Position numbers and translations under genes: made by a program. 37,350 bases of DNA. Origin: Leucoraja erinacea. Taxonomy: Eukaryota. This document shows positions 4,890 to 36,963 of this stretch, piece after piece (positions within the stretch are counted from its first letter, which is position 1; each line of letters starts with the position of its first letter). The stretch covers positions 1 to 37,350 of the forward strand of contig NW_026575662.1 in NCBI RefSeq assembly GCF_028641065.1, in the 5' to 3' direction. The notes under the pieces are model-generated. The model saw only the letters and a list, made by a program, of their open reading frames with translations. It was not told the DNA's origin and searched no databases.

Positions 4890-6837
4890 CGTACCACAAT
4901 CTCGGGTTTGGTGCTCGAGGTGCAGCCATGACCTTTTGTTCTGGCGGCCTGGAGCAATCGCATTTTTGACGTCATCCATGGATTGTCCCACCAGTCTATC
5001 CGGGCCACGGTGGCGATGGTGGCCGCGGGATTCACGTGGCACGGGCTGCGGAAGCACGTCAGTCGCTGGGCCCGGGCGTGCATTCGGTGCCAAACTTCCA
5101 AGGTGCATCGGCACGTCCGGGCGCCTGTTCAGTTGTTCGCAGTGCCTCGCTGGTGCTTCGACCACGTGCACATGGACATCGTGAGGCCGCTGCCTCCATC
5201 GCGGGGTGTTTGCACGTGCTGACGGTGGGGGATAATTTTACGTGGTTACCGGAGGCCATCCCACTCGTGAACAATTCTGCCAAGTCGTGCGCTCGTGGCC
5301 TCGTGGCTAATTGGATTATAACCATATAACCATATAACAATTACAGCACGGAAACAGGCCATCTCGACCATTCTAGTCCGTGCCGAACACATAATCTCCC
5401 CTAGTCCCATATACCTGCGCTCAGACCATAACCCTCCATTCCCTTCCCATCCATATAACTATCCAATTTATTTTTAAATGATAAAAACGAACCTGCCTCC
5501 ACCACCTTCACTGGAAGCTCATTCCAAACAGCTACCACTCTCTGAGTAAAGAAGTTCCCCCTCATGTTACCCCTAAACTTCAGTCCCTTAATTCTCATGT
5601 CATGCCCCCTTGTTTGAATCTTCCCTACTCTCAGTGGGAAAAGCTTTTCCACGTCAACTCTGTCTATCCCTCTCATCATTTTAAAAACCTCTATCAAGTC
5701 ACCCCTTAACTTTCTGCGCTCCAAAGAATAAAGCCCTAACTTGTTCAACCTTTCTCTGTAACTTAGTTGCTGAAACCCAGGCAACATTCTAGTAAATCTC
5801 CTCTGTACTCTCTCTATTTTGTTGACATCCTTCCTATAATTAGGCGACCAAAATTGTACACCATACTCCAGAATTGGCCTCACCAATGCCTTGTACAATT
5901 TTAACATTACATCCCAACTTCTATACTCAATCGCCCGCTTCAGGGTGCCGCTGGACATCACTTCCCACTGGGGTGCCCAGTTCACATACAAACTGTGGTC
6001 CGCAATGGCTCGCCTGCTGGGGACTCAGCTCCACCATTCGACAGCGTACCATCCCCAGGGTTGGTGGAGCGCTTCCACCGCCATCTCACGGACGCCTTGA
6101 AGACTCACCTCACCTCACGGGCCCTGAATGGATGGACGAGTCGCCGTGGGTCCTGCTGGGAATTTGGACTGCCCCGAAGTAGCATTTGTCATCATCCTCG
6201 GTGGAGTTGGTTTATGGCGCTCAGCTCAGCGTTCCCGGGGGATTGATCCCGGCCGCTGATGGGTCCCGGGAGTTGCCATCATCTGTGCTGGTGCGCTTGT
6301 GGGAGCAGGTCGTCACCCTGTCTCCCGACATCTCGTCGTGGGGTGGTGCCATTCCACGTGCCAGCGGCGCTCGCGAACAGTTCGTACGTCTTTCTGCACC
6401 GCGACGCCCACAGGTCACCCTTGCAGCGCCCATATGACGGTCCATTTCGGGTGCTGTGGCACGGGTCCACCATGTTTGTTTTGGACATGGGTGGCTGGCA
6501 AGAAACTGTGTCGGTGTCGTGACTGAAGCGGGCCCATTTGGACCTGAGCGAGCCAGTACAGGTAGCTCAAATTTACCGGCAGGGGAATCCGCCATCCCGG
6601 GTTCCCCCGAGTACGGTTTCCCGTCCGTTTCGGTGCCTCTGGTTCTGCGGGAGGGGGGGGTGGTCATGTGGCGGCACCTGATGGTGAGCCATGCATAGGG
6701 CGAACCCTCAGCTCTGGAGGGAGGAGTCAGGCGTCACGGTAACGGGAGATGCAAGTCACGGGGCTCCCCGGGCGGTATATAAGGTCGGCCGGGCAACGCT
6801 CTTGCCCCTTGTTAGGAGTTAGAAGCTGTACGGAGGA
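4890..6837 (+). mobile_element. Degenerate Ty3/Gypsy LTR retrotransposon 3' part (integrase, PPT, partial 3' LTR), split by a CR1 at 5317-5931
   Basis: HHCC-like SHQSIRAT...CIRC, core HVHMDIV, NWI|ARFRVPLDITS, AYHPQ, VERFHR and the GPF motif LQRPYDGPFRV, with several frameshifts. Polypurine tract at about 6648-6660, then tgtggcgg (probable LTR start near 6667) and tatataag near 6776. Confidence 0.88.
5317..5931 (-). mobile_element. CR1 family A (A1) inserted in the Gypsy integrase
   Basis: ORF 5401-5991(-) ends GLSAGIWD. Removing the insert rejoins aattggat|cgcccgc, which reads NWIAR. Confidence 0.93.
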
Positions 6838-20419: not shown

Positions 20420-20978
20420 CAGTGGAGAAACAGGCCCTTCGGCCCTGCATGTCCTATCCCCACATCCCACCTGCCCACGTTTGATCCATATCCCTCCAAA
20501 CCTGTCCTATCCATGTACCTGTCTAACTGTTTCTTAAATGTTGCGCTAGTCCATGCCTCAACTACCTCCTCTGGCAGCTTGTTCCATACACCTACCACCC
20601 TTTGTGTGAAAAAACATACCCCTTAGATTCTTATTAAATCATTTGCCGTTCAGCTTAAACTTATGTCCTCTGCTCCTCGATTCACCTACTCTGGGCAAAA
20701 GACTCAACCATAGCTATTCAAATCATGATTTTATACACCTCTATTAGATCATCCCTCATCCTCCTGTGCTCCATGAAATAGAGTCCCAGCCTACTCAACC
20801 TCTCCCTATAGCTCTGGCCCTCTAGTGCTGGCAACATCCTCGTAAATCTCCACTGTACCCTTTCCAGTTTGAGGACATCTTTCCGATAACATGGTGCCCA
20901 GAGCTGAATACAATACTCTGAATGCGGCCTCACCACCTTCTTATGCAACTGCAACATGACCTCCCAACCTCCATACTC
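20420..20978 (-). mobile_element. Older CR1 3' portion
   Basis: ORFs 20718-20957(-) and 20401-20598(-). Confidence 0.8.
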
Positions 20979-21049
20979 AGCCTGACCCGCTGAGTTACTC
21001 CAGCACTCTGTGAAACGTCACAGAACAGGGCAAGATTAGCAAGTTTTGA

Positions 21050-21791
21050 TAGGGAATTGAAGAATACAGTTGAACAGAGGGATCTGGGTATAACCGTGCA
21101 TAGTTCCTTGAAGGTGGAATCTCATATAGATAGGGTGGTAAAGAAAGCTGGTGTGCTGGACTTTATAAATCAGAGCATTGAGTATAGAAGCTGGGATGTA
21201 ATGTTAAAATTGTACAAGGCATTGGTGAGACCAAATCTGGAGTATGGTGTACAATTTTGGTCACCCAATTATAGGAAGGATGTCAACAAAATAGAGAGAG
21301 TACAGAGGAGATTTACTAGAATGTTGCCTGGGTTTCAGCAACTAAGTTACAGAGAAAGGTTGAACAAGTTAGGGCTTTGTTCTTTGGAGCGCAGAAGGTT
21401 AAGGGGGGACTTGATAGAGGTTTTTAAAATGATGAGAGGGATAGACAGAGTTGACGTGGAAAAGCTTTTCCCACTGAGAGTAGGGAAGATTCAAACAAGG
21501 GGGCATGACATGAGAATTAAGGGACTGAAGTTTAGGGGTAACATGAGGGGGAACTTCTTTACTCAGAGAGTGGTGGCTGTGTGGAATGAGCTTCCAGTGA
21601 AGGTGGTGGAGGCAGGTTCGTTTTTATCATTTAAAAATAAATTGGATAGTTATATGGATGGGAAGGGAATGGAGGGTTATGGTCTGAGCGCAGGTATATG
21701 GGACTAGGGGAGATTATGTGTTCGGCACGGACTAGAAGGGTCGAGATGGCCTGTTTCCGTGCTGTAATTGTTATATGGTTATATGGTTATA
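21050..21791 (+). mobile_element. CR1 family A, mosaic (mostly A2 5' part, A1 3' part), abutting the Ig V exon
   Basis: ORF 21057-21707. The tail (ttatatgg)n runs directly into ttagagtgg, the LEW codons. Confidence 0.92.
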
Positions 21792-22074
21792 TTAGAGTGG
21801 CGTTTACACAACAGCACAACTCCGCTTGTGAGACTGAGCCGATCAAACTGCCCTCCACACACTGACCGACCCGCTTGTAACTGTTCAGTTCGCTGGACGA
21901 CCAGACCATCCCACACGGGGCGAGTCCAACTCTACCCCGTGAATGGGTCCCTGTTACTGCGGGATTTACGGCGCAGTGACAGCGGAGTGTACGAGATATC
22001 GGTTTACAGCGGCGGTAACAGCAGCGTGAAAGACACCGTGACATTAACGGTCTACAATCACCACACAGAGACAG
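21792..22074 (+). CDS. Ig V-set domain exon (strands C-G only) of a putative CD2/SLAM/CEACAM-like receptor; 5' part missing next to a CR1 insertion
   Basis: Translates LEWRLHNSTTPLVRLSRSNCPPHTDRPACNCSVRWTTRPSHTGRVQLYPVNGSLLLRDLRRSDSGVYEISVYSGGNSSVKDTVTLTVYNHHTET. C-strand Trp, GRVQL, NGSLLLRDL and DSGVY are V-set motifs, and the F-strand Cys is replaced by Ile. Ends at phase-1 donor ACAG|gtagga (GT at 22075). Confidence 0.85.
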
Positions 22075-22189
22075 GTAGGAACCGGCGGAGCGTTCACACA
22101 CAGAGGGGACAATTAAATCATGAAAGTCCAAATAGCAATGGGGTAACAAAGCGGGGTAATTAAAGTGAGAGTAACCCCTTCCCTCCCAT

Positions 22190-22246
22190 CGGCGCAGCGG
22201 TAGAGTTGCTGCCTCACAGCGCCGGAGACCATTGTTCCATTCTCAC
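22190..22246 (+). mobile_element. V-SINE head, interrupted
   Basis: ggcgcagcggtagagttgctgcctcacagcgcc. Confidence 0.65.
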
Positions 22247-23430
22247 CAAAGACCCTATAGCGAGCAAGATAGGCTACTCCTGCGAAATGCAATGGGCTGA
22301 CGCAAAGATCTTATAGCAGACCTTTGGGCTGACGTGTAGTACGCCACGGAGCGGATCCTGGGCATTTCCCCCCGCCCATTTTAGTAACCGGAACCGACCC
22401 CACTCTCACTGTGATCAACGTTGCGGGGAACAGTTTGTGTGTGATATAGGGTTAGATTCATAATTCTGCCAGTTCATACATCTGTTAATTCTTGTCAATA
22501 ATAATATTTGACTCTGGTAATTGTCCTTTTTAATGTTTTTTAAATCATTTCTTTTTAAATGGCTCACAAGCAGTGTTTTGAGTTGATTTTGTAATAACCG
22601 GGACCTACCCGACCCGACTCGCAGCGCAATCAACGTTGCGGGGGAAGTTTTTGTGTGTGATATAGGGTTAGATTCATAATTCTGTTAGTTCATAATTCTG
22701 TTAATTCTTGTTAAAAAATAAAATGTTTATACATTTGGACTGGTAATATTCTTTTTTTACTGTATTTTAAATCATTTATTTTTAAATGGCATATGCTTTG
22801 AGTATAGAAGTTGGGATGTAATGTTAAAATTGTACAAGGCATTGGTGAGGCCAATTCTGGAGAATGGTGTACAATTTTGGTCGCCTAATTATAGGAAGGA
22901 TGTCAACAAAATAGAGAGAGTACAGAGGAGATTTACTAGAATGTTGCCTGGGTTTCAGCAACTAAGTTACAGAGAAAGGTTGAACAAGTTAGGGCTTTAT
23001 TCTTTGGAGCGCAGAAGGTTAAGGGGGGACTTGATAGAGGTTTTTAAAATGATGAGAGGGATAGACAGAGTTGACGTGGAAAAGCTTTTCCCACTGAGAG
23101 TAGGGAAGATTCAAACAAGGGGACATGACATGAGAATTAAGGGACTGAAGTTTAGGGGTAACATGAGGGGGAACGTCTTTACTCAGAGAGTGGTAGCGGT
23201 GTGGAATGAGCTTCCAGTGAAGGTGGTGGAGGCAGGTTCGTTTTTATCATTTAAAAATAAATTGGATAGTTATATGGATGGGAAGGGAATGGAGGGTTAT
23301 GGTCTGAGCGCAGGTATATGGGACTAGGGGAGATTATGTGTTCGGCACGGACTAGAAGGGTCGAGATGGCCTGTTTCCGTGCTGTAATTGTTATATGGTT
23401 ATATGCTGTGTTTGAGTTGATTTTGTGTTA
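22247..23430 (+). mobile_element. Putative DNA-transposon end (CAAAG terminus) with an internal ~210-bp tandem repeat, split by a CR1 at 22798-23405
   Basis: Starts caaagaccctatagc. Two units (about 22385-22594 and 22595-22797 plus 23405-23427) share taaccgg...atcaacgttgcgggg...tgtgtgtgatatagggttagattcataattctg...tttaaatggc...tttgagttgattttgt. Confidence 0.55.
22798..23405 (+). mobile_element. CR1 family A (A1), 5'-truncated
   Basis: ORF 22821-23327 and tail. Flanked by atatgct at 22791-22797 and 23401-23407. Confidence 0.93.
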
Positions 23431-23744
23431 CACTTGCACTCTGTAATTCATTCATCTAATCACGTTAATGTAATCACACTGTTCACAACTGCAGTATTTG
23501 GGAAAATAATAGCAATACGAAGAAGGGTTCCTACTAGAAATGTCATCTATTCCTTCTCTCCAGAGATGCTGCCTCATGCGCTGAGTTACCTCAGCACTTT
23601 GTGTCTATCTTTAATTAAACCCTATCTTGCACTAAATGTGGATTCCTTTATCCTTTATCTGTACACTGTGGACGGATTGATTGTAATCAAGTTTAAGTCT
23701 TTTCTTTGACTGGATATCAGGTAACAAACAAGTACCTCCATACA

Positions 23745-24237
23745 CCATATAACCATATAACAATTACAGCACGGAAACAGGCCATCTCGACCCTTCTAGT
23801 CCGTGCCGAACACATAATCTCCCCTAGTCCCATATACCTGCGCTCAGACCATAACCCTCCATTCCCTTCCCATCCATATAACTATCCAATTTATTTTTAA
23901 ATGATAAAAACGAACCTGCCTCCACCACTGTCACTGGAAGCTCATTCCACACAGCTACCACTCTCTGAGTAAAGAAGTTCCCCCTCATGTTACCCCTAAA
24001 CTTCAGTCCCTTAATTCTCATGTCATGTCCCCTTGTTTGAATCTTCCCTACTCTCAGTGGGAAAAGCTTTTCCACGTCAACTCTGTCTATCCCTCTCATC
24101 ATTTTAAAAACCTCTATCAAGTCCCCCTTAACCTTCTGCGCTACAAAGAATAAAGCCCTAACTTGTTCAACCTTTCTCTGTAACTTAGTTGCTGAAACCC
24201 AGGTAACATTCTAGTAAATCTCCTCTGTACTCTCTCT
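23745..24237 (-). mobile_element. CR1 family A (A1), 5'-truncated
   Basis: ORF 23824-24120(-) and tail. Confidence 0.92.
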
Positions 24238-24583
24238 ACACGTGACAGTAATAAACTAAACTAAACTAGCTAACCATAACAAATGCCGAATACCATCTGA
24301 TACCATACGATTGAACTTGATAGTAGGGAGATTGATCTGTCAGCAGTCATAAAAACACAAAATACATGAAATTAAAGTGAGGAGTGGAAAGGATTGAGGA
24401 TGTGCAAAGATTGGGAAGGGAGAGGGAAGGGAGTCAGTCTCAGTCTTCCTCATCACAGTTCTCACGCTGCGGGATGGGAGCGTGGCCAGGGTTGTGTGGG
24501 TCTTTGGTGATATTGGCTGCCTCATTGAGGAAGTGGTCCCTTCTGATCTAGTTTACTGCAATAACCCAACTGTTTTATTACAG

Positions 24584-24718
24584 AAAGTGTCACCTCCACT
24601 TCCGCGACTACAACAGGATCTGGGCGGAACAGGCTGATGGATACAGTTATACCCGCATCCCTTTTCCTTATCCTAATCACCATTGGCTTGACCATACTGC
24701 TGACCAAAGGCCTCAGGA
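24584..24718 (+). CDS. Stalk and transmembrane exon of the same receptor
   Basis: Acceptor tgttttattacag| and donor A|gtaagt; 135 nt, phase 1-1. Encodes (E)SVTSTSATTTGSGRNRLMDTVIPASLFLILITIGLTILLTKGLR, a Ser/Thr stalk plus an uncharged hydrophobic run of about 20 aa. Confidence 0.9.
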
Positions 24719-24834
24719 GTAAGTGACCCTTCCTGACTCAGTGAATGGCGGTCAGCATCTAGTGGTAGATCACAAGTTTACTGATGGCATGGCCTCACAT
24801 ACCGAGAGAGAAGGGCAGGTTGCACCAGCACTGT

Positions 24835-24968
24835 GCAGGAAGGAACTGCAGACGCCGGTTTAGAATGAAGATAGACACAAAGAGCGGGAGTAACTCAGTG
24901 GGACAGGCAGCATCTCTGGAGAGAAGGAATTGGTGATGTTTCAGGTCGAGACCCTTCTTCAGACTGAG
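24835..24968 (-). mobile_element. Penelope-like terminal repeat with a hammerhead motif (minus strand)
   Basis: Reverse complement reads agtCTGAAGAagggtctcgacctGAAAcatcacc followed by the family's 3' segment. Confidence 0.65.
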
Positions 24969-25027
24969 AGTCTGGAGCAAAGAATTTATTTTCAATGGTG
25001 TTTAAATTCAAAGTTGTGTGAAGCTTA

Positions 25028-25671
25028 CATAGAAACATAGAAACATAGAAATTAGGTGCAGGAGTAGGCCATTCGGCCCTTCGAGCCTGCACCGACATTC
25101 AATATGATCATGGCTGATCATCCAACTCAGTATCCCGTACCTGCCTTCTCTCCATACCCCCTGATCCCCTTAGCCACAAGGGCCACATCTAACTCCCTCT
25201 TAAATATAGCCAATGAACTGGCCTCAACTACCCTCTGTGGCAGAGAGTTCCAGAGATTCACCACTCTCTGTGTGAAAAAAAAGTTCTTCTCATCTCGGTT
25301 TTAAAGGATTTCCCCTTTATCCTTAAGCTGTGACCCCTTGTCCTGGACTTCCCTAACATCGGGAACAATCTTCCTGCATCTAGCCTGTCCAACCCCTTAA
25401 GAATTTTGTAAGTTTCCATAAGATCCCCTCTCAATCTTCTAAATTCTAGAGAGTATAAAACAAGTCTATCCAGTCTTTCTTCATAAGACAGTCCTGACAT
25501 CCCAGGAATCAGTCTGGTGAACCGTCTCTGCACTCCCTCTATGGCAATAATGTCCTTCCTCAGATTTGGAGACCAAAACTGTACGTAATACTCCAGGTGT
25601 GGTCTCACCAAGACCCTGTACAACTGCAGTAGAACCTCTCTGCTCCTATACTCAAATCCTTTTGCAATGAA
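25028..25671 (-). mobile_element. CR1 family B, 5'-truncated
   Basis: ORF 25258-25773(-), CR1 part FIAKGFEYRS onward, plus tail. Confidence 0.92.
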
Positions 25672-26630
25672 ATTACCTGATCTCCCGGTTGCTAAACACT
25701 TTAATTCCCCTTCCAATTCCCACAATGCCCTTTCCGTCTTGGGTCTCCATTGTTCGAGTGAGGCTAAATACAAATTAGAGGACCAGCTTCACATATTTTG
25801 CATGTGCAGCTTACACCCCAGGGGTGTGAACATTGATTTCTCTAACTTCAAGTAACCCCGGCCTTCCCTCTCTCTCCATCCCTCCCCCACCCAAGTCACA
25901 TCAGCTTTATATTCTCACCTCGCTACACCTAACAATTACCTATTTCCTTTTTCATTGTTACATAGAAACATAGAAACATAGAAAATAGCTGCAGGAGTAG
26001 GCCATTCGGCCCTTCGAGCCTGCATCACCATTCAATATGATCATGGCTGATCATCCAACTCAGTATCCCGTACCTGCCTTCTCTCCATACCCCCTGATCC
26101 CTTTAGCCACAAGGGCCACATCTAACTCCCTCTTAAATATAGCCAATGAACTGTGGCCTCAACTACCTTCTGTGGCAGAGAATTCCAGAATTCCTCTGTG
26201 TGAAAAATGTTTTCCTCATCTCGGTCCTAAAAGATTTCCCCCTTATCCTTAAACTGTGACCCCCTTGTTCTGGACTTCCCCAAAATCTGGAACAATCTTC
26301 CTGCATCTAGCCTGTCCAACCCCTTAAGAATTTTGTAAGTTTCTATAAGATCCCCCCTCAATCTTCTAAATTCTAGCGAGTACAAGCCGAGTCTATCCAG
26401 TCTTTCATCATATGAAAGTCCTGACATCCCAGGAATCACTGGTGAACCTTCTCTGTACTCCCTGTACATTATTTGTATGCATATTTTTCATTCATTTGTT
26501 CTATATCTCTACACCATTGTCTATATATCTCATGTCTCTTTCCTGCGATTTTCAGTCTGAAGAAGGAAACGTCACCTATTGCTTTTCTCATGAGATGCTG
26601 CCTGTCTTGCTGAGTAACTCCAGCTTTATT
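25672..26630 (+). mobile_element. Penelope-like retroelement 3' end (GIY-YIG endonuclease C-terminus plus terminal repeat), split by a CR1 at 25961-26466
   Basis: LPDLPVAKHFNSPSNSHNALSVLGL...KLEDQLHIFCMCSLHPRGVNIDF* matches the PVAxHF...E..I..L..L.PxGxN pattern of PLE endonucleases. Followed by ctgaagaag|gaaacgtc (stem II deleted) near 26557. Confidence 0.75.
25961..26466 (-). mobile_element. CR1 family B, 5'-truncated
   Basis: IPGMSGLSYDERLDRLGL... and tail. Confidence 0.9.
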
Positions 26631-26692
26631 GCATAAACAAGTTTTTTTGAAAGGTAAGACCTAACAGACATGGAAAACTTGATGACGATACT

Positions 26693-27967
26693 GGACTCTT
26701 ATAGAATTTTTCGAGGATGTAACTAGTAGCGTGGATAGGGGAGAACCAGTGGATGTGGTGTATCTGGACTTCCAGAAGGCTTTCGACAAGGTCCCACATA
26801 AGAGATTAGTATACAAACTTAAAGCACACGGCATTGGGGGTTCAGTATTGATGTGGATAGAGAACTGGCTGGCAAACAGGAAGCAAAGAGTAGGAGTAAA
26901 CGGGTCCTTTTCACAATGGCAGGCAGTGACTAGTGGGGTACCGCAAGGCTCGGTACTGGGACCCCAGCTATTTACAATATATATTAATGATCTGGATGAG
27001 GGAATTGAAGGCAATATCTCCAAGTTTGCGGATGACACTAAGCTGGGGGGGCAGTGTTAGCTGTGAGGAGGATGCTAGGATGCAAGGATGCAAGGTGACT
27101 TGGATAGGCTGGGTGAGTGGGCAAATGTTTGGCAGATGCAGTATAATGTGGATAAATGTGAAGTTATCCATTTTGGTGGCAAAAAAAACGGGAAACGGGA
27201 AGCAGACTATTATCTAAATGGTGGCCGATTGGGAAAGGGGGAGATGCAGCGAGACCTGGGTGTCATGGTACACCAGTCATTGAAGGTAGGCATGCAGGTG
27301 CAGCAGGCAGTAAAGAAAGCGAATGGTATGTTAGCTTTCATTGCAAAAGGATTTGAGTATAGGAGCAGGGAGGTTCTACTGCAGTTGTACAGGGTCTTGG
27401 TGAGACCACACCTGGAGTATTGCGTACAGTTTTGGTCTCCAAATCTGAGGAAGGACATTATTGCCATAGAAGGAGTGCAGAGACGGTTCACCAGACTGAT
27501 TCCTGGGATGTCAGGACTGTCTTATGAAGAAAGACTGGATAGACTTGGTTTATACTCTCTAGAATTTAGGAGATTGAGAGGGGATCTTATAGAAACTTAC
27601 AAAATTCTTAAGGGGTTGGACAGGCTAGATGCAGGAAGATTGTTCCCGATGTTAGGAAAGCCCAGGACAAGGGGTCACAGCTTAAGGATAAGGGGGAAAT
27701 CCTTTAAAACCGAGATGAGAAGAACTTTTTTCACACAGAGAGTGGTGAATCTCTGGAACTCTCTGCCACAGAGGGTAGTTGAGGCCAGTTCATTGGCTAT
27801 ATTTAAGAGGGAGTTAGATGTGGCCCTTGTGGCTAAGGGGATCAGGGGGTATGGAGAGAAGGCAGGTACGGGATACTGAGTTGGATGATCAGCCATGATC
27901 ATATTGAATGGTGGTGCAGGCTCGAAGGGCCGAATGGCCTACTCCTGCACCTAGTTTCTATGTTTCT
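26693..27967 (+). mobile_element. CR1 family B, longest copy, including the RT core
   Basis: [24 protein letters not shown] and FADD motifs, one frameshift near 27050-27090, and tail. Confidence 0.95.
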
Positions 27968-27989
27968 GTCTCTATGGACTGGTCTCTGC

Positions 27990-28523
27990 TTAGTTTAGCT
28001 TAGAGATAAGCTCTTCGGCACACCGAGCCCTCTCCGACCAGCGATCCCCGCACACTAATACTATCCTACACACAGGAGGGGCAATTTTATAATTTGACCA
28101 ACCCAATTAGCCTACAAACCTGGGTACACAAAAATGCTGGAGAAACTCAGCGGGTGCAGCAGCATCTATGGAGCGAAGGAAATAGGCGATGTTTCGGGCC
28201 GAAACCCTTCTTCAGACTAAAGAAGGATTTCGGCCCGAAACGTTGCCTATTTACTTCGCTCCATAGATGCTGCTGCACCCGCTGAGTTTCTCCAGCATTT
28301 TTGTGTACCTTCGATCTTCCAGCATCTGCAGTTCCTGCTTGAACATTTAGCCTACAAACCTGCTCGTCATTGGAGTGTAGGAAGAAACCGAAGATCTCGG
28401 AGAAAACCCACGTAGGTTACGGGGAGAACGTACAAACTCCGAACAGACAGCACCCGTAGTCAGGATCGAACCTGCGTCTCTGGTGTTGTAAGGCAGCAAC
28501 TCTACCGCTGCGTCACCGTGCCG
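27990..28523 (-). mobile_element. V-SINE containing a nested palindromic element
   Basis: Reverse complement of the SINE head at about 28460-28523, body, and tail near 27990. Confidence 0.75.
28123..28346. mobile_element. Palindromic Penelope-derived element with opposed hammerhead motifs and a 16-bp TSD
   Basis: About 28123-28309 is a hairpin centred near 28216. ttagcctacaaacctg occurs at 28107-28122 and 28347-28362. Confidence 0.85.
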
Positions 28524-28709
28524 CATCTGGAGAATTTCACCACGTTTTGGCTGCCAATTGTCAAATGGCTCACACTTTCACTTCATCCATCTCTGGCTCC
28601 TTCATTTCTTTATCCACCCCTGGGACTAAATTAGTGACCAATATCCTCCATAAACCTAGAATAAACTCTATATGTGCAACATATTAATCCAGCATTAAAG
28701 TATTGTGTT

Positions 28710-29010
28710 TAGTTTTAGTTTAGTTTAGAGATACAGCACAGAAACAGGCCCTTCGGCCCACTGAGTCCACATTGATCATGTTCCCACTATCCTACACACA
28801 CTAGGGACAATTTACATTTATACCAAGCCAATTAACCTACAAACCTGTCCATCTTTGGAGTGTGGGAGGAAACCAAAGATCTTGGAGAAAACCCGTGCAG
28901 GTCACGGGGCGAACATACAAATTCCGTACAGACAGCACCCGTAGTCAGGATCGAACCCAGGTCCCTGGCGCTGTAGGGCAGTATCTCTACCGCTGCACCA
29001 CCATGCTACC
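28710..29010 (-). mobile_element. V-SINE (HE1-like)
   Basis: Reverse complement of head, central domain and (ctaaa)n tail. Confidence 0.78.
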
Positions 29011-29100
29011 CTGCTTCCTTCATTTAATGGCTACTAATTGGTAAGACTCTGGATAATGCACAATTAGAAATCCTGTTGCTATCTCATTGTTTTATGTCAG

Positions 29101-29180
29101 ATTATTATCGAAGGAGAAAGTCGGACGCCACGGAAGGATTTGTTGCGTTTAACAGAGTTTCACGGCAAGACTTGAACAAG
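29101..29180 (+). CDS. Juxtamembrane cytoplasmic exon
   Basis: Acceptor ctcattgttttatgtcag| and donor AAG|gtaagt; 80 nt, phase 1-0. Encodes (N)YYRRRKSDATEGFVAFNRVSRQDLNK with a basic stop-transfer cluster. Confidence 0.85.
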
Positions 29181-29334
29181 GTAAGTGGGCAGTGGGTTGG
29201 AGCGTGGAGAAATCATTCGCAAAATAAAATCTGCTTCATCAATTGTGTCAAATGACCCCTCTTCCTTGGCCAAACATGTTAGCATCTGGAAGGCAAAGGG
29301 AGTGAATGCGATTCTGGTTGTATACATTTGAGCT

Positions 29335-29520
29335 GCTGGAGCTACTGAAGAAGGATCTCGACCCGAAACATAGTCACCTCTTCCTTTTCTCCAGAGATGC
29401 TGCCTGACCCACTGAGTTGCTCCAGCATTTTGTGCCGAAGCTGCAGGAACTCAGCGTGTCAGGCAGTATCAGGAGAAGGAAATGGACAGTCGACATTTCG
29501 GGTTGGGACCTTTCCTCTGG
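29335..29520. mobile_element. Penelope-like terminal fragments in both orientations
   Basis: ctgaagaaggatctcgacccgaaac...ccagcattttgtg followed by an inverted arm. Confidence 0.6.
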
Positions 29521-29791
29521 ACTATCAGGGTGGGGAGGGGAAAACCAGTAGGGAGTGGGGGGGTGGAAAGAGATGGCACCTGGTCAGTGGATCCAGGTTG
29601 AGAAGGGGATGGGTTGCTGGATATAGTTGAACTGGGTTAAAGAGGGATGGTGATAACAACGGTGGGTGGGATGTGAATGATGGAGGTGACCAGGGGTTGC
29701 AGATGATGGGATCAGATGGGAAGGGAAGGGATGGTGGTGTCTGGGACCAAAGAAGAGAAAGGTGTAGGGATCATGTTAATGAGTGGGAAGG

Positions 29792-30230
29792 GTTAAAATT
29801 GTACAAGGCATTGGTGAGGCCAATGGTGGTTTTGGTCGCCTAATTATAGGACCAAAATAGAGAGAGAGGAGATTTACTAGGCCTGGTTTCAGCAACTAAG
29901 TTAGAGAAGGAACAAGTGCAGGAGCGCAGAAGGTTACTGATAGAGGTTTTTAAAATGATGAAGGGATAGACAGAGTTGACGTGGAAAAGCTTTTCTGGAG
30001 TAGGGAAGATTCTGACAGGGGACAGGATTGAAGGGGTAATGGGGGTCTGACTCAGAGAGTGTCCCTGTGTGGATCCCAAATCGTCACCCATTTTTATCAT
30101 TTAAAGGAGAGGAAGTTGGGTGGGAAGGGAATGGCAATGAGGAGAGGGGCGGAGGGGAGATTATGTGTTCGGTGACTGGGTCGAGATGGCCTGTTTCCGT
30201 GCTGTAATTGTTATATGGGATATGGTTATA
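29792..30230 (+). mobile_element. CR1 family A1-like copy with many microdeletions
   Basis: Collinear short exact blocks of A1 sequence from gttaaaattgtacaaggc to the tail. Confidence 0.75.
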
Positions 30231-30459
30231 GACAAAAAACGCTGGAGTAATCTCATTTAGTTGAAGGGTGGTGAAAAAGGGTGGAACTCATTGCCACCAA
30301 AGGACGAGAAGTTGGAGGCCAATGCCATTAGGAGAGTATATTGGGTGAAAGCAGGTTGATCGACAGATACATTTATTCAGGGTGGTGAAGGGTCATTGCC
30401 ACAGACGTCAAGTGTTATGGACGAGGGGACAGAACCTCATTGAAAGGACTTACCGAAAT

Positions 30460-30790
30460 AGGGGAAAGGCCTGGATAGAGTGGAAGTGGAGAGGATGTTT
30501 CCACTCATGCGAGAGTCCAGGACCAGAGGTCACAGCCTCAAAATTAAAGGACTTTCCTTGAGGAAGGAGATGAGGTGGAAGTTCTTTAGTCAGAGGGTGT
30601 TGAATCTGTGGAATTCATTGCCACAGAAGGCTGTGGAGGTAAGTTAGTAGATATTTTTAAGGCAGAGATAGCTAGAGTGGGTTATGGGGAAAGGCAGGAG
30701 AATGGGGTTGAGAGTGTAAAATAGATCAACCATGATTGAACGGCGGAGTAGATGTGATGGGCTGAATGGTCTAATTCTGCTCCTATGATA
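30460..30790 (+). mobile_element. Older CR1 3' end
   Basis: ggatagagtgga...ttctttagtcagagggtgttgaatctgtggaattcattgcc...gggctgaatggtctaattctgctcc. Confidence 0.75.
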
Positions 30791-31089
30791 TAGGAACATG
30801 AGTTGGGGGGGCGTAAAGTTGTGGGAAAGGAGAGTATGTATGGATGAAAGGGTGGATAGAGGAACAGAGGTGCTTCACGGGATGGGGAGTGGTCTGTTCT
30901 GTTTTAGAGCAGAGGGATCTAGGAGTGCAGGTACAAAGTTCCTTGAAATTGGCTTCACAGCTCAATAAGGCAATCAACAAGGATTTTGCCACATTGGCTT
31001 TCATCAGTCAGAGTACTGAGTATAGAAGTTGGAAGATAGACACAAAAAGCTGGAGTAACTCAGCGGGACAGGAAGCATCCTGTCAGTAT

Positions 31090-31978
31090 GTCAAGGAGGA
31101 CTCTCTCGAACCTCTACAGGTGCACAGCAGAGAGCATGCTGACCGGTTGCATCGTGGCTTGGTTCGGCAACTTGAACGCCCAGGAGCGTAAATGACTGCA
31201 AAAAGTTGTAAACACTGCCCAGTCCATCATCGGCTCTGACCTCCCCACCATCGAGGGGATCTATCGCAGTCGCTGCCTCAAAAAGGCTGGCAGAATCATC
31301 AAAGAGGGGATAGAGCCTTCTCTGTTGCTGCTCCGGCACTCTGGAACACCCTGCCGTTGCACATCATACAGGCCCCCTCACTGTCCATCTTCAAATCCAG
31401 TGTTAAAACGCATTTGTACTCCCTGGCTTTTGACCATGCCTGAGGCTTTGCTTCTGTTTGTGGTGTTTTTGATGTTTCTTTATTTTACATGTCTTTTCCT
31501 ACTATTTCTTTTGATTGTTATTTTTGGTGTGTATTAACTTTTTTGTCAATGATTAGTGATGTACAGCACTTTGTTGCAGCTTTGTTTGTTTTTAAAGTGC
31601 TCTATAAATAAAATTATTATTATTATTATTATAAAGACCCACACCATCCTGGCCACACACTCATCTCTCCGCTGCCTTCAGGTAGAAGGTACAGGAGCCT
31701 GAAATCTGCAACATCCAGGTTCAGTAATAGCTACTTCCCCACAGCCATCAGGCTATTAAACTCAACTCAAACAAACCCTAATCTTTAAATAGCTCATTAC
31801 ACTTTATCTGTTTATTTATGTGTGTGTATATATATATATTCATTGGTGTATGGTCACACTGATCTGGTCTGTTCTGTATTTATTCATGCCTACTATATTC
31901 TGTTGTGCTGAAGCAAAACAAGAATTTCATTGTCCTATATGGGACTCATGACAATAAACTCACTTGAATCTTGAATCT
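31090..31978 (+). mobile_element. Rex1/Babar LINE 3' end split by an L2 at 31306-31632
   Basis: YRCTAESMLTGCIVAWFG...IIKD|PHHPGH...LPSGRRYRS and 3' tgacaataaa. Confidence 0.8.
31306..31632 (+). mobile_element. L2 LINE 3' end
   Basis: Nearly identical to 32683-33000, with (ATT)n tail. Flanked by aaaga at 31301-31305 and 31633-31637. Confidence 0.88.
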
Positions 31979-32344
31979 CTGGAGAGAAGGAATGGGTGGC
32001 GTTTTGGGTCGAGACTCTTCTTCAAACGGATGACACACTCCTTATAGCCATTACCCACTAATTCAGGCTGGTTCTGGTAAACCTCTTCTGTGCTCTTTCC
32101 AAAGCCTCCACATTCTATCTGTACGGGGCGACCAGAACTGCATGCAATACTACAAATGCAGATCAACCAATGTCCTATGAAGCTGCATTATGCAAATCTG
32201 CACTACCCAACTCTTATACGTAATGGCTCGTGCAACGCAGGCAAGCATACCACACCCCTCCTTTACTACTTTGTCTACCTGTGTTGCCATTTACAGGAAG
32301 CTGTGGAGCTGTGAGCTACTGAGATGCAGCACTTGACATTTCTT

Positions 32345-32988
32345 ACACTTTATTACATCTAGGCTGGATTACTGTAACGCGCTCTATTTTGGTGTTGCTC
32401 GTTCTTCACTGGCTCGTCTCCAGTTGGTTCAGAATGCTGCTGCTCGCCTTTTAACAGGGACTCGAAAGACGGAGCACATATCGCCAATTCTGGCCTCCAT
32501 ACACTGGCTCCCGGTGCACTTTCGGATTCATTTTAAGATACTGCTATTTGTTTTTAAATCTCTGAATGGGCTCGCCGCGCCTTACATCTCTGAGCTGCCC
32601 AACCCATACGCTCCTGCCCGGTCCCTCAGGTCAGCTGGTCAGCTGCTCCTGGAGGTACCGAGGTCTAGTCGGAGGCTCAGAGGGGATAGAGCCTTCTCTG
32701 TTGCTGCTCCGGCACTCTGGAACACCCTGCCGTTGCACATCAGACAGGCCCCCTCACTGTCCATCTTCAAATCCAGTGTTAAAACGCATTTGTACTCCCT
32801 GGCTTTTGACCATGCCTGAGGCTTTGCTTCTGTTTGTGGTGTTTTTGATGTTTCTTTATTTTACATGTCTTTTCCTACTATTTCTTTTGATTGTTATTTT
32901 TGGTGTGTATTAACTTTTTTGTCAATGATTAGTGATGTACACCACTTTGTTGCAGCTATGTTTGTTTTTAAAGTGCTCTATAAATAAA

Positions 32989-33021
<33 letters not shown>
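32345..33021 (+). mobile_element. L2 LINE, 5'-truncated
   Basis: SRLDYCNALYFG...LQLVQNAAARLLTG...HWLPVHFRIHFKILL...RAFSVAAPALWNTLP, then AATAAA and (ATT)n. Confidence 0.9.
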
Positions 33022-33417
33022 TCACAGGAATAAATTTATTCCACCCGTTCCTTCTCTCCAGAGATGCTGCCTGTCCCGCTGAGTTACTCCAGCTTTGTGT
33101 GTCTATGTTTGGTTTAAACGTTAAACCAGCATCTGCAGTTCCTTCCTACACATAGAAGTTGGAAGGTTATGTTACAACATTACAAGACATTCCTTGAGAA
33201 CACATTTGGAGTGTTGTGTTCAGTTTTGGTCGACCTGTTATTGGGGTTGATCCCCACCAGATGGCGCCACACGACAGCAGACTCTTGTGTGTCTTGCTGC
33301 CTTTTTTTTGGTATGACTGTACAGCAAATCAAATCCCTCGTGTGTTGCAAAACATACTTGGCTAATAAATTACGATTATGATTATGAATAAGCAGAAAAG
33401 GGTGCAGAGAAAATTTA

Positions 33418-33634
33418 TTTAAGAAGGAACTGCAGATGCTGGAAAATCGAAGGTACACAAAAATGCTGGAGAAACTCAGCGGGTGCAGCAGCACCTATGG
33501 AGCGAAGGAAATGGGCAACATTTCGGGCCGAAACCGCAGTCTGAAGAAGGGTTTCGGCCCAAAACGTTGCCTATTTCCTTCGCTCCATAGATGCTGCTGC
33601 ACCCGCTGAGTTTCTCCAGCATGTTTGTGTACGA
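33418..33634. mobile_element. Palindromic Penelope-derived element with a 13-bp TSD
   Basis: Hairpin at about 33453-33632, same family as 28123-28346 in the opposite orientation. cagagaaaattta occurs at 33405-33417 and 33635-33647. Confidence 0.85.
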
Positions 33635-33910
33635 CAGAGAAAATTTACGTTGCAAGGACTCATGGGCCTGAGTTGTGGGGAGAGGTTGAGCAGGCTTGGA
33701 TTGCAGCAGGATAAGAGGTGATGTTACAGAAGTGCATCATATCATGAAGAGATAAATGTAGTCTTTTACCCAGAGTTGGGATATCAAGAGCCAGAGGACA
33801 CGGGTTAAAGATGAGGGGGGAAAGATCCTGAGGGACAACTTTCACACCTAGAATGAGTTGTAGACAGGAGGTAGATGAGGCCAGGTACTATCACAGCGTT
33901 GAAAAGCATT

Positions 33911-34661
33911 TAACCCATATAACAATTACAGCACGGAAACAGGCCATCTCGACCCTTCTAGTCCGTGCCGAACACATAATCTCCCCTAGTCCCATATACC
34001 TGCGCTCAGACCATAACCCTCCATTCCCTTCCCATCCATATAACTATCCAATTTATTTTTTAAATGATAAAAACGAACCTGCCTCCACCACCTTCACTGG
34101 AAGCTCATTCCACACAGCTACCACTCTCTGAGTAAAGAAGTTCCCCCTCATGTTACCCCTAAACTTCAGTCCCTTAATTCTCATGTCATGTCCCCTTGTT
34201 TGAATCTTCCCTACTCTCAGTGGGAAAAGCTTTTCCACGTCAACTCTGTCTATCCCTCTCATCATTTTAAAAACCTCTATCAAGTCCCCCCTTAACCTTC
34301 TGCGCTCCAAAGAATAAAGCCCTAACTTGTTCAACCTTTCTCTGTAACTTAGTTGCTGAAACCCAGGCAACATTCTAGTAAATCTCCTCTGTACTCTCTC
34401 TATTTTGTTGACATCCTTCCTATAATTAGGCGACCAAAATTGTACACCATACTCCAGAATTGGCCTCACCAATGCCTTGTACAATTTTAACATTACATCC
34501 CAACTTCTATACTCAATGCTCTGATTTATAAAGGCCAGCACACCAAAAGCTTTCTTTACCACCCTATCTACATGAGATTCCACTTTCAGGGAACTGTGCA
34601 CAGTTATTCCCAGATCCCTCTGTTCACCTACATTCTTCAATTCCCTACCATTTACCATGTA
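33911..34661 (-). mobile_element. CR1 family A (A1), 5'-truncated
   Basis: ORF 34053-34658(-) and 3' UTR. Confidence 0.93.
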
Positions 34662-34796
34662 CTATTTGGATAGTTTAGTTTAGTTTTTTGTTATGAAATA
34701 CAGCACAGAAACAGGCCCTTCAGTCCAGTCCGTATCCAACTGCAATCCCCGCATATTAAAACTATCACACACACACTATCTGGGGCTAAACGTTTT

Positions 34797-35176
34797 TAGA
34801 GGTCTTTAAAATGATGAGAGGGATAGACAGAGTTGATGTGGACAAGCTTTTCCCTTTGAGAATAGGGAAGATTCAAACAAGAGGACATGACTTCAGAATT
34901 AAGGGACAGAAGTTTAGGGGTAATATGAGGGGGAACTTATTTACTCAGAGAGTGGTAGCGGTGTGGAATGAGCTTCCAGTGGAAGTGGTGGAGGCAGGTT
35001 CATTGGTATCATTTAAAAATAAATTGGATAGTCATATGGATGAGAAGGGAATGGAGGGTTATGGTATGAGTGCAGGCAGGTGGGACTAAGGGGAAAAAAA
35101 GTTGTTCGGCACGGACTTGTTGGGCCGAGATGGCCTGTTTCCGTGCTGTAATTGTTATATGGTTATATGGTTATAA
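34797..35176 (+). mobile_element. CR1 family A (A2) 3' end nested in a minus-strand V-SINE (about 34675-35328)
   Basis: ORF 34811-35089 and tail, with SINE halves on both sides. Confidence 0.9.
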
Positions 35177-35359
35177 ACCTGTACATCTTTGCAGTGTGGG
35201 AGAAAACCGAAGATCTTGGAGAAAACTCACGTACAAACTCCGTACAGACAGCACCCATAGTCAGGATCGAACTCGGGTCTCTGGCGCTGTAAGGCAGCAA
35301 CTCTACCACTGCGTCACTGTGCTGCCCCAAAGTTACCTCGATAGGATAGATTTAGAAGG

Positions 35360-35772
35360 AATTGAATAACCTTTAATAATCCTTTACAGGAAATTACAGT
35401 GCCACAACAGCTTCAAACAGACATACCACACATTTCCACAGATAGCTTCAATACTTAATAAGTTAAAATACAATGAATGAATACTAAAAAAATCCAAAAT
35501 TATTTTTGTGCATTATAAAACCTTATAGCAGCTGGTATACAAGACTAACTATATCTCTCCGTTTTGCACATTGGTGCAATCAGTCTCTGACTGAAGATGC
35601 TGCACTTGATCACCTTCAGGGCGTGGAGTGGGTGAGTGGGGTTGGTCATTATTGAACCTAGTTTGTTCAGAGTTCTGGCCTCTGCCACCTGCTGGACCGT
35701 TAGTTGCTCAGCCCCGACCACTGAGCCGGCCTTCCTGATCAGCTTGTCCAGTCTGTTTTTGTCCGCTGTGCT
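35360..35772 (-). mobile_element. Rex1/Babar LINE 3' fragment
   Basis: ADKNRLDKLIRKAGSVVG...NPTHPLH motif. Confidence 0.75.
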
Positions 35773-36107
35773 TTGAGGCCAAATGAGGCAGATGGGACAT
35801 GTGTAGATGGGGCATGCTGGTTGGCATGGGCTAGTTGGGCTGAAGGGACATTTCACACTATGACACTATGACTCCATGTGCAGGCAGTTGAAACTAGTTT
35901 ATTTTGGCTTCATGTTCAGCGTAGACACTGTGGGCTGAAGAGCCTGTTCCTGTGTTGTACTATTCCATGTTCCACATTCCAACTTTCCTCTCAAAGTATC
36001 TGAAAACGTAGTCTTCCTCCGTTAACCACTTGTTGCCCAGCTACATACTTTCTTGCATCAACTCGAATATTGCATCCCGTAAATGGTCCTCTCTCTGTTC
36101 TTCACAG

Positions 36108-36242
36108 GCCCCGGAATTAGATTCACCGGTTGAGACCACATACTGCCTTCTCCAGCTTCCTCAGGCCAACAGGCCAGCAACACCAGATAATCAGGACGCA
36201 GGCATTATCTACGCTGTGCCACAGAGAGTGCAACGCAGGTGA
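36108..36242 (+). CDS. Terminal cytoplasmic exon with two tyrosine motifs
   Basis: Acceptor cctctctctgttcttcacag|, phase 0. Encodes APELDSPVETTYCLLQLPQANRPATPDNQDAGIIYAVPQRVQRR* with TxYxxL and IxYxxP motifs. Confidence 0.8.
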   Translation, partial: APELDSPVETTYCLLQLPQANRPATPDNQDAGIIYAVPQRVQRR

Positions 36243-36267
36243 AGGGCTGGATCTCACATCTGCGCCC

Positions 36268-36963
36268 TATCCACATGGGGATCCTGTGGATAGGGTGAAC
36301 TGTTTTAAATATCTGGGAGTCCACATCTCTGAGGATATGACATGGTCATCACACGCCTCAGCACTGGTGAGTAAGGCAAGGCAGCGCCTTTACCACCTCA
36401 GGCAATTGAGGAAATTCAGAGTGTCTCCGAGGATCCTCCAGTGCTTCTACGCAGCGGCGGTGGAAAGCATCTTGTCCGGGAACATTACCATCTGGTTCGG
36501 GAATTGCTCTGCCAAGGACAAGAAGGCTCTGCAGAGAGTAGTACGTTCGGCCGAACGCACTATGGGAACTTCACTCACCCCCCTGCAGGGCATATACAAC
36601 AGGAGGTGCAACTCCAGAGCAAACAAAATCATGAGAGACCTCTTCCACCCCTGCAACGGACTGTTCCAGCCGCTACGGTCAGGCAAACGCCTCCGTTGCC
36701 ATGCAGTGAGAACGGAGAGGTTGAGAAGGAGTTTCTTCCCAGAGGCAATTCGGACTGTAAACGCCTTTCTCACCAGGGACTAACTGTACAGAACGTTTTT
36801 CCTTCTATTATTTATTATGTAATATAATATGTGTGTTATGATTGTGTTTATAATTTGTTTGGTTGTTTTGTTGTTCCACGAGCATTGCCACTTTCATTTC
36901 ACTGCACATCTCGTATGTGTATGTGACAAATAAACTTGACTTGACTTGACTTGACTTGACTTG
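36268..36963 (+). mobile_element. Rex1/Babar LINE 3' end
   Basis: VNCFKYLGVHI...KARQRLYHLRQLRKF...VESILSGNITIWFG...SFFPEAIR, AATAAA at 36929 and (ACTTG)n tail. Confidence 0.9.

What the first reader, a model, noticed from the sequence alone, without database searches (positions are those of the whole stretch)
21792..36242. Hidden spliced gene for a single-V-domain immune receptor with ITSM/ITIM-like tail
Seen: four non-repeat islands join through canonical GT-AG introns with consistent phases (1, 1, 0) into one stop-free frame of about 210 aa. The order is Ig V domain, S/T stalk, TM (VIPASLFLILITIGLTILLT), RRRK, and a tail with ETTYCLL and GIIYAVP. Known: a V domain lacking the F-strand Cys with NGSL.L..L...DSG.Y is typical of CD2/SLAM/CEACAM N-terminal domains; TxYxx(V/I/L) motifs recruit SAP/EAT-2 or SHP phosphatases; YxxP suits Crk/Nck/Abl SH2 domains. 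Inference: an inhibitory or switch-type receptor with no C2 domain, unlike the V+C2 layout of typical CD2/SLAM proteins, possibly from a poorly described chondrichthyan family.
Basis: partly seen in the sequence, partly recalled or inferred. Interest (0 to 1): 0.8.

Follow-up and report, generated by a model that had tools for sequence, protein, structure and literature searches.

The report
Beheaded skate single-V immune receptor gene
The four exons are real and belong to an unnamed immune-receptor family of sharks, rays, birds and turtles, but in this skate copy a jumping-gene insertion has removed the start of the gene, so it is probably a young pseudogene.

Summary
They have GT-AG borders and phases 1, 1, 0, and they give about 210 stop-free codons. 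They are not chance: each matches RefSeq-predicted proteins of other skates, best Amblyraja radiata LOC116990025 (tblastn E 6e-50, 5e-12, 2e-12, 1e-17). Rhinoraja longicauda LOC144602877 reproduces all three junctions.

The family has a single V domain, a stalk plus TM, and a two-exon tail with two tyrosine motifs. It occurs in sharks, rays, sawfish, birds and turtles. All members are 'uncharacterized' or auto-named HEPACAM-like, and I found no paper on it. Some sharks and skates also have a sister form with nearly the same V domain, an Arg in the TM and a short tail, which suggests a paired receptor system.

The 'V exon' here starts in mid-domain. A young CR1-type repeat ends at 21791 and the homology starts at 21792. 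The signal peptide and strands A, A' and B (relatives' residues 1-70) are nowhere in the 21.8 kb upstream. Two RNA runs gave no coverage and no splice joint.

Verdict: a decapitated, probably non-functional copy of an inhibitory-type member. The scan's note s1-877491, on this same window, already flagged the decapitation.

The parts
21047..21791 (+). CR1-type LINE 3' fragment of about 745 nt. Its 3' tail (...ATTGTTATATGGTTATATGGTTATA) abuts the V-exon remnant.
   Evidence: It is 96.5-98.9% identical to other copies in the window, and five copies share the same 5' end. There are 16 copies of the 3' end motif, all ending in the (TTATATGG)n tail. An open 237-codon frame spans 20994-21704.
21792..22074 (+). 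E1: 3' part of the V-domain exon (strands C to G, 94 codons plus 1 base). It ends at a GT donor in phase 1 and has no native acceptor.
   Evidence: 87% identical to P0055 residues 233-326 (E 6e-50). Pfam V-set profile positions 57-109 only. Family C-half profile E 1.6e-35, N-half profile no hit. It aligns from residue 71 of P0002, whose model places strands A, A' and B at residues 38-61.
22075..22163 (+). Read-through of the E1 donor into intron 1 up to a stop. The RefSeq model of A. radiata LOC116990023 uses this same reading.
   Evidence: tblastn of P0001 runs through 22160 with 27 of 29 residues identical.
24584..24718 (+). E2: Ser/Thr stalk plus transmembrane helix (TM about 24646-24705), phase 1 to phase 1.
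   Evidence: 41 of 44 residues identical to P0055. It aligns with the stalk and TM of P0002. The splice sites are consensus.
29101..29180 (+). E3: juxtamembrane cytoplasmic exon (YYRRRKSD...), phase 1 to phase 0.
   Evidence: 26 of 26 whole codons identical to P0055 and 77% identical to P0002.
36108..36242 (+). E4: last coding exon, with TTYCLL (36135-36152), IIYAVP (36204-36221) and the TGA stop (36240-36242).
   Evidence: 36 of 44 residues identical to P0055. The stop is at the same position as in the skate and shark proteins.
36245..36780 (+). LINE reverse-transcriptase C-terminal fragment that starts right behind the stop codon, inside what should be the 3' UTR.
   Evidence: The 36121-36780 frame hits PF09004 at E 1.3e-12. 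From my own knowledge, this Pfam model picks up LINE tails. The sequence was read.

Best explanation
This is a 5'-truncated ('decapitated') copy of the inhibitory-type member of an unnamed single-V receptor family. Intact relatives are type I membrane proteins. They have a leader, one V-set domain without the canonical B-F disulfide (it has a conserved NCS...NCS cysteine pair instead), a glycosylated stalk, a TM, and a tail with two tyrosine motifs about 20-27 residues apart. By inference, the phosphorylated tyrosines recruit tandem-SH2 phosphatases or SAP-type adaptors. In this window a young CR1-type element ends exactly where the V-exon homology begins. Everything 5' of that point is gone: part of strand C, strands B, A' and A, the leader exon and the promoter. 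This most likely happened by an insertion-associated deletion or by later recombination between repeats. The remaining exons are still open, keep consensus splice sites and keep the family's conserved residues, so the lesion is recent. Without a signal peptide and three beta-strands the locus cannot make a folded surface receptor, so it is most likely a young pseudogene. Shown here: the exon homology, the junctions, the missing N-terminal part and the repeat boundary. Inferred: the mechanism of loss, non-function and the signalling role.
For: The four exons match P0055 and P0002 and nothing else in the window does. The junctions agree with the P0002 protein (TET-E-SVTS, LR-x-Y, LNK-APEL). Residues 1-70 of P0001 and 196-232 of P0055 have no match in the window by tblastn. 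A family profile of the N-half also finds nothing (best E 0.46), while the C-half scores 1.6e-35. The repeat tail consensus ends at 21791-21794, and the repeat is 96.5-98.9% identical to its copies. The AlphaFold model of P0002 (V domain pLDDT above 90) puts the leader helix at 17-32 and strands A, A' and B at 38-61, all upstream of residue 71 where the window begins. Conserved family residues (W, both NCx cysteines, R, P, NGSLLL, DSGVY, LTV, tail Tyr) are all kept in the window exons. RNA runs X21 and X24 gave depth 0 to 0.8 on E1 and E2 and no 22074/24584 joint.
Against: Only 21.8 kb upstream is visible, so a far-upstream leader or N-half exon cannot be excluded. An AG at 21794-21795 would give a phase-1 acceptor in frame. 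The remaining exons show no decay. That fits a recent lesion, but it also fits continued use. The RNA test covered only two runs of unknown tissue from coded organisms, and which of them is the window's species was not established.
Confidence: 0.75

Rival explanations
1. The gene is intact and working, and its leader and the first half of the V domain lie more than 21.8 kb upstream. On this reading the V domain is split by an intron in skates, and the AG at 21794-21795, supplied by or next to the repeat tail, is the real phase-1 acceptor.
For: An in-frame phase-1 AG lies at 21794/95. E1-E4 are intact, with conserved residues and consensus splice sites. Introns here are already 2.5-6.9 kb.
Against: A repeat 3' end sitting 0-4 nt from a native acceptor would have replaced its pyrimidine tract and branch site. 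The other three acceptors have clean pyrimidine tracts, and this one has an AT-rich microsatellite. No N-half or leader lies in the 21.8 kb upstream. No RNA was seen. From my own knowledge, not tested here, V/N domains of CEACAM- and CD2-like genes are normally single exons.
Confidence: 0.1
2. The lesion is specific to one allele or one assembly. The sequenced haplotype carries the CR1-associated deletion, while other little-skate haplotypes, or a second copy elsewhere, keep an intact gene.
For: The repeat is young (up to 98.9% identical to other copies) and the downstream exons are undecayed, so the event is recent enough to be polymorphic. Contigs of run X16 hold E1 from 21848 on, and E2, at 98-99% identity.
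Against: No read or contig that crosses 21792 into an intact V exon was seen. However, the listed contigs do not reach the junction, so this is untested. The repeat/exon junction is itself unique sequence and is unlikely to be an assembly join.
Confidence: 0.1
3. The truncated locus is still transcribed from a repeat-borne or upstream promoter, through a cryptic acceptor (21794/95 or 21887/88). It makes an N-terminally truncated protein or a non-coding RNA with some regulatory or decoy role.
For: There are two phase-1 AGs inside or at the edge of E1. A bamboo-shark gene model (P0086) joins its leader to the position equivalent to 21889. One read each lay on E1 and E2 in run X24.
Against: No leader exon is present. 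A half V domain would not fold. Coverage is essentially nil. The shark model may be a prediction artefact.
Confidence: 0.05

Closest known systems
RefSeq-predicted skate genes LOC116990025 (Amblyraja radiata, P0055) and LOC144602877 (Rhinoraja longicauda, P0002), with their shark, ray, bird and turtle relatives (e.g. Carcharodon LOC121291131, Gallus LOC771657)
   Same: The exon set and order are the same: V, stalk plus TM, cyt1, cyt2. Residue identity to P0055 is 87% (E1), 93% (E2), 100% (E3 whole codons) and 82% (E4). The conserved W, the NCx...NCS cysteine pair, ENGSLLLRDL, DSGVY and the two tail tyrosines are the same, and the stop is at the same position.
   Different: The window copy lacks the leader and strands A, A' and B. 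It lacks the 11-residue duplication seen in P0001 and P0003. No protein of this locus is in the database.
CEACAM N domains (CEACAM1/5/6/8 and the single-V CEACAM19) and CEACAM1's ITIM-plus-ITSM tail
   Same: These are the best solved-structure sequence matches: CEACAM1/6 N domain, strands C'' to F, full-sequence E 5e-9 to 4e-7, with single-domain E only 0.15-0.3. Both lack the canonical disulfide and both have two tail tyrosines about 25 residues apart. A CEACAM19 cluster is among the nearest Atlas neighbours.
   Different: There are no IgC2 domains. The extra NCS...NCS cysteine pair is not a CEACAM feature as far as I know. Bird relatives occur in chicken and duck, where intact CEACAM genes are reported absent (PMC13278318). 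Synteny with LIPE/CNFN/TOMM40 could not be tested.
HEPACAM / HEPACAM2 (the name given automatically to several members) and JAML
   Same: There is V-domain sequence similarity around the D-E-F strands. JAML is the best profile hit in the PDB (E 5e-9), and an Atlas structural neighbour is HEPACAM (TM 0.40).
   Different: HEPACAM proteins have V plus C2 domains and a long unrelated tail, and JAML has two V domains. Both keep the canonical cysteines. The fold search gives only generic IgV matches (PD-L1, CAR D1, TIGIT).
CD2/SLAM family
   Same: Both have a V domain without the B-F disulfide. There are weak PDB hits to CD2 and CD48 (E 0.008-0.1). The tail has a TxYxxL motif (TTYCLL).
   Different: There is no membrane-proximal C2 domain. 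Only one ITSM-like motif is present, with L rather than V/I at +3. No sequence hit is significant at the domain level.
Paired inhibitory/activating Ig receptors (e.g. SIRP alpha/beta, Siglec-5/14, CEACAM1/3)
   Same: In the same species nearly the same V domain occurs on a two-tyrosine tail form (P0010) and on a short-tailed form with an Arg in the TM (P0088, P0014, P0072, and little-skate P0003).
   Different: This is an analogy of layout only. No adaptor binding, expression or gene conversion was tested here.

Membership tests
Unnamed single-V receptor family (LOC116990025 / LOC144602877 type) | C-terminal half of the V domain with W, NCx...NCS, R, P-x-NGSLLL-x-DL, DSGVY and no F-strand Cys | tested here: met
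   E1 is 87% identical to P0055. The family C-half profile scores E 1.6e-35. Conserved columns are kept, except S after the first NC, which is also P in little-skate P0003.
Unnamed single-V receptor family (LOC116990025 / LOC144602877 type) | Leader plus N-terminal half of the V domain (strands A, A', B; motif VNGTV...LL..SY) | tested here: not met
   No match in the window by tblastn or by profile (best E 0.46).
Unnamed single-V receptor family (LOC116990025 / LOC144602877 type) | Stalk/TM exon and a two-exon tail with two tyrosine motifs, joined in phases 1, 1, 0 | tested here: met
   E2, E3 and E4 match P0055 and P0002, and the junction residues agree with the P0002 protein.
Pfam V-set (PF07686) | Score at or above the gathering cut-off of 26 bits over the domain | tested here: not met
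   The window piece scores 24.9 bits on profile positions 57-109 only. Intact relatives score 26.9-33.3 bits over positions 2-109.
CEACAM family | N domain specifically related to CEACAM N domains | tested here: inconclusive
   These are the best PDB sequence hits, but the single-domain E values are 0.15-0.3. The fold search is generic IgV.
CEACAM family | Locus syntenic with LIPE/CNFN/TOMM40, and a taxon range matching CEACAM1 | tested here: not met
   No flanking genes lie in the window, so synteny is untestable. The taxon range does not match: family members occur in Gallus, Anas and Numida, where PMC13278318 reports no intact CEACAM genes.
CD2/SLAM family | V plus C2 ectodomain | tested here: not met
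   In full-length relatives the V domain is followed directly by the stalk and TM, and no C2 exon lies between E1 and E2.
ITIM/ITSM inhibitory receptors (functional class) | (S/I/V/L)xYxx(I/V/L) or TxYxx(V/I) motifs in the tail | tested here: inconclusive
   TTYCLL fits TxYxxL, while IIYAVP fits neither. Sharks have a canonical ITIM (LTYSLL) plus a non-canonical TIYAFA. Birds have an ITSM plus an ITIM.
ITIM/ITSM inhibitory receptors (functional class) | Phosphotyrosine-dependent binding of SHP-1/SHP-2/SAP | not testable with these tools
   This needs biochemistry.

The most novel reading that the evidence does not exclude
The exons belong to an ancient, still unnamed paired-receptor system. 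It has an inhibitory two-tyrosine form and a short-tailed form with an Arg in the TM, both carrying nearly the same disulfide-less V domain. It is kept in cartilaginous fishes and sauropsids but has no evident mammalian counterpart. In the little skate the inhibitory partner has just been lost by a CR1-associated decapitation, while the activating-type partner (LOC129716097) stays intact. That would be a snapshot of how paired receptors become unpaired.
Probability: 0.2. Interest if true: 0.55.

Novelty: new member of a known kind. Interest (0 to 1): 0.33.

Why it matters
For this locus little is at stake. It is most likely a recently disabled copy of a gene that RefSeq already predicts in sister species. 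Two things have wider value. First, the case is a clean example of a LINE-associated 5' truncation that leaves perfectly readable downstream exons, and such exons can mislead exon-joining gene finders. Second, the family behind it is conserved from sharks to birds and turtles, has a conserved extra cysteine pair, two tail tyrosine motifs and an apparent activating-type twin, yet has no name and no literature that I could find. A comparative immunologist could take it up as a candidate old inhibitory/activating receptor pair.

Tried and rejected
1. Chance ORFs: rejected, because all four pieces hit skate proteins at E 1e-12 to 6e-50.
2. A split exon with its 5' half just upstream of the repeat: rejected for the visible 21.8 kb. 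The flank at 21018-21046 and the inverted CR1 at 20721-21017 are not V-exon sequence.
3. Membership of the new CD28 family members (CD28HL1-3, CD28X): rejected, because these keep YxC and EIP/PPP motifs that this family lacks.
4. Bird CEACAM1: rejected on taxon range and domain number.
5. Chicken TREM-B1: considered from memory for the two-V chicken member. By its abstract TREM lies on chromosome 26. The chicken member sits on a 90.9-Mb record, which by my own reading is a macrochromosome. Not pursued.
6. Foldseek against the PDB gave only generic IgV neighbours.
7. The ESM Atlas gave leads only: CEACAM19, HEPACAM, VSTM5, TIGIT.
8. A paper search for six LOC identifiers of the family found nothing.
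All searches were made exon by exon, by reference.
11. The big representative search was not used. Its top 150 hits would be filled by this same family and carry no names.
12. The search of earlier findings by sequence gave nothing.


Full report
**1. The observation**

The window has no N and no soft-masking.

| Exon | Coordinates | Length | 3' border |
|---|---|---|---|
| E1 | 21792-22074 | 283 nt | ACAG\|gtagga |
| E2 | 24584-24718 | 135 nt | AGGA\|gtaagt |
| E3 | 29101-29180 | 80 nt | CAAG\|gtaagt |
| E4 | 36108-36242 | 135 nt | ends in TGA |

- E2, E3 and E4 have clean pyrimidine-rich AG acceptors.
- The phases are 1, 1 and 0, and the reading frame stays open for about 210 codons.
- The quoted TM, RRRK, ETTYCLL and GIIYAVP strings are all present.
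- The rest of the window is almost wholly repeats:
  - 16 copies of one CR1-type 3' end;
  - reverse-transcriptase and integrase fragments.

**2. The exons are real**

- A word search with the E1 open frame found Amblyraja radiata LOC116990023 (P0001, 83% identical).
- Searching with P0001, and then with a family profile, found 140 relatives.
- The closest relative is A. radiata LOC116990025 (P0055).
  - tblastn of P0055 hits exactly the four islands (E 6e-50, 5e-12, 2e-12, 1e-17) and nothing else in the window.
  - Residue identity is 87% for E1, 41/44 for E2, 26/26 whole codons for E3 and 36/44 for E4.
- Rhinoraja longicauda LOC144602877 (P0002) is a complete model with leader, V domain, stalk, TM and tail. 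It reads TET-E-SVTS, LR-H-Y and LNK-A across the three junctions, the same as the window's splice model.
- The stop codon is at the family's usual position.

**3. What is missing**

- Pfam V-set matches only profile positions 57-109 in E1, at 24.9 bits (cut-off 26). Intact relatives match positions 2-109.
- P0001 residues 71-204 align to 21792-22160. Residues 1-70 have no counterpart anywhere in the window.
- The same holds for P0055 residues 196-232.
- A family profile of the N-half gives a best E of 0.46, against 1.6e-35 for the C-half.
- An AlphaFold model of P0002 built on a 38-sequence alignment has pLDDT above 90 over the V domain. It places the leader helix at residues 17-32 and strands A, A' and B at residues 38-61. 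The window begins at residue 71, inside strand C.
- Upstream of 21792 lies the 3' tail of a CR1-type element spanning 21047-21791.
  - Its tail...ATTGTTATATGG(TTATATGG)n, ends in the same way as the other copies in the window.
  - It is 96.5-98.9% identical to those copies, so it is young.
  - Its 5' flank is another, inverted CR1 fragment and not V-exon sequence.

The exon was therefore cut in the middle, and the 5' part of the gene was lost or moved more than 21.8 kb away. The scan's own note s1-877491 said the same for this window, and I agree with it after testing.

**4. State of the remainder**

- E1-E4 carry no stop or frameshift.
- They keep the nearly invariant family residues: W, both NCx cysteines, R, P, NGSLLL, DSGVY, LTV and the tail Tyr.
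- The one departure is NCP instead of NCS. Little-skate P0003 shares it over an identical 20-residue stretch.
- Earlier notes of the scan call this genome little skate. The shared stretch fits that, but I did not prove the species.
- Two AG dinucleotides (21794/95 and 21887/88) would give in-frame phase-1 acceptors, so use of a cryptic acceptor cannot be excluded.

**5. RNA and DNA reads**

No listed holder of the stretch is on record as RNA. I laid two raw RNA runs and two contig sets on 21600-24800 at 90% likeness.

| Run | Kind | Result on E1 and E2 |
|---|---|---|
| X21 (organism C) | raw RNA reads | depth 0; no 22074/24584 joint |
| X24 (organism A) | raw RNA reads | one read on each exon; no 22074/24584 joint |
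| X16 (organism B) | contigs | 21848-22217 with 7 differences; 24477-24800 with 3 differences |
| X18 (organism C) | contigs | 92-95% identical pieces, in two variants |

- All other RNA coverage lies on repeats.
- None of the listed contigs crosses 21792.
- The tissues are unknown, so this is weak evidence of silence and no evidence on polymorphism.

**6. The family**

- Members occur in sharks, skates, rays, sawfish, many birds (including chicken, ducks and ratites) and turtles.
- All are 'uncharacterized' or automatically named HEPACAM-like or HEPACAM2-like.
- The canonical B and F cysteines are absent in most members. An NCS...NCS pair is invariant instead.
- Tail motifs differ by group.

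| Group | First tyrosine motif | Second tyrosine motif |
|---|---|---|
| Sharks | LTYSLL (ITIM) | TIYAFA (non-canonical) |
| Skates | TTYCLL or IIYCLL | [IV][IV]YAV[PS] (non-canonical) |
| Birds | TxYA[RT][IV] (ITSM) | VVYTSI (ITIM) |

- Some sharks and skates also have a sister protein with nearly the same V domain. It has a TM containing Arg and a short tail (P0088, P0014, P0072, little-skate P0003). That is the layout of paired inhibitory and activating receptors, but this is inference only.

**7. Comparison with known families**

- The best solved-structure sequence matches are CEACAM N domains, JAML, CD2 and CD48.
- The fold search returns only generic IgV domains.
- The Atlas neighbours include CEACAM19, HEPACAM, VSTM5 and TIGIT.
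- It is not the bird CEACAM1 of Zimmermann and Kammerer. That gene has IgC domains and is reported absent from fowl (PMC13278318), whereas this family is present in fowl.
- It lacks the YxC and EIP/PPP marks of the extended CD28 family (PMC11599192).
- No paper holding six of the family's LOC identifiers was found.

**8. Verdict**

- The exon reading is right and the family assignment (a single-V receptor with a tyrosine tail and no C2 domain) is right.
- The locus is not a complete hidden gene. It is a decapitated and probably dead copy (confidence 0.75).
- The family is already predicted in RefSeq and is not confined to cartilaginous fishes.

Noticed in passing
P0003 (little skate), P0072 (catshark), P0088 and P0014 (bamboo sharks); no window coordinates: Sister proteins carry nearly the same V domain as the two-tyrosine form of the same species, but have a TM with an Arg and a short tail. 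This suggests an activating-type partner, that is, a paired receptor family.
   Followed up: partly
P0002 (Rhinoraja) and P0061/P0066 (Mobula): The last tail exon, which holds both tyrosine motifs, is tandemly duplicated and both copies are included in the gene models. The result is four tyrosine motifs.
   Followed up: no
P0055 (A. radiata LOC116990025) and P0066 (Mobula): RefSeq models of this family absorb retroelement pieces. P0055 has a 195-residue reverse-transcriptase fragment fused in front of the V domain. P0066 has a CR1-like stretch (RRRMRGDLMEVYKMMRGIDRE) inside the tail. The family sits in very repeat-rich DNA in several species.
   Followed up: no
P0001 and P0003 versus window 21852: An 11-residue tandem duplication (TPLVRL-type unit ending in Cys) in the C' region is present in the Amblyraja and Leucoraja activating-type paralogues. 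It is absent from the window copy, P0055, P0002 and the sharks. The run X16 contig's alignment ends at 21848, close to this point.
   Followed up: partly
window 36245-36780: A LINE reverse-transcriptase tail begins two bases after the receptor's stop codon, so the original 3' UTR is displaced or replaced.
   Followed up: partly
window 4932-5219: An integrase H2C2 zinc-finger fragment (PF17921, E 4e-11) of an LTR-type retroelement.
   Followed up: partly
window 593-1175: A GC-rich stretch (55-60% GC) with long overlapping open frames on both strands and no Pfam hit. It could be a CpG-island-like region or a low-complexity repeat.
   Followed up: no
window 22191-22230 and 23537-23574: Very high read pile-ups with sharp loose ends in all four runs mark the edges of short, highly repeated elements (SINE-like) inside intron 1.
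   Followed up: no
P0030-P0042 (birds, e.g. Gallus LOC771657): Bird members with two tandem copies of the family's V domain before the TM and tail.
   Followed up: no
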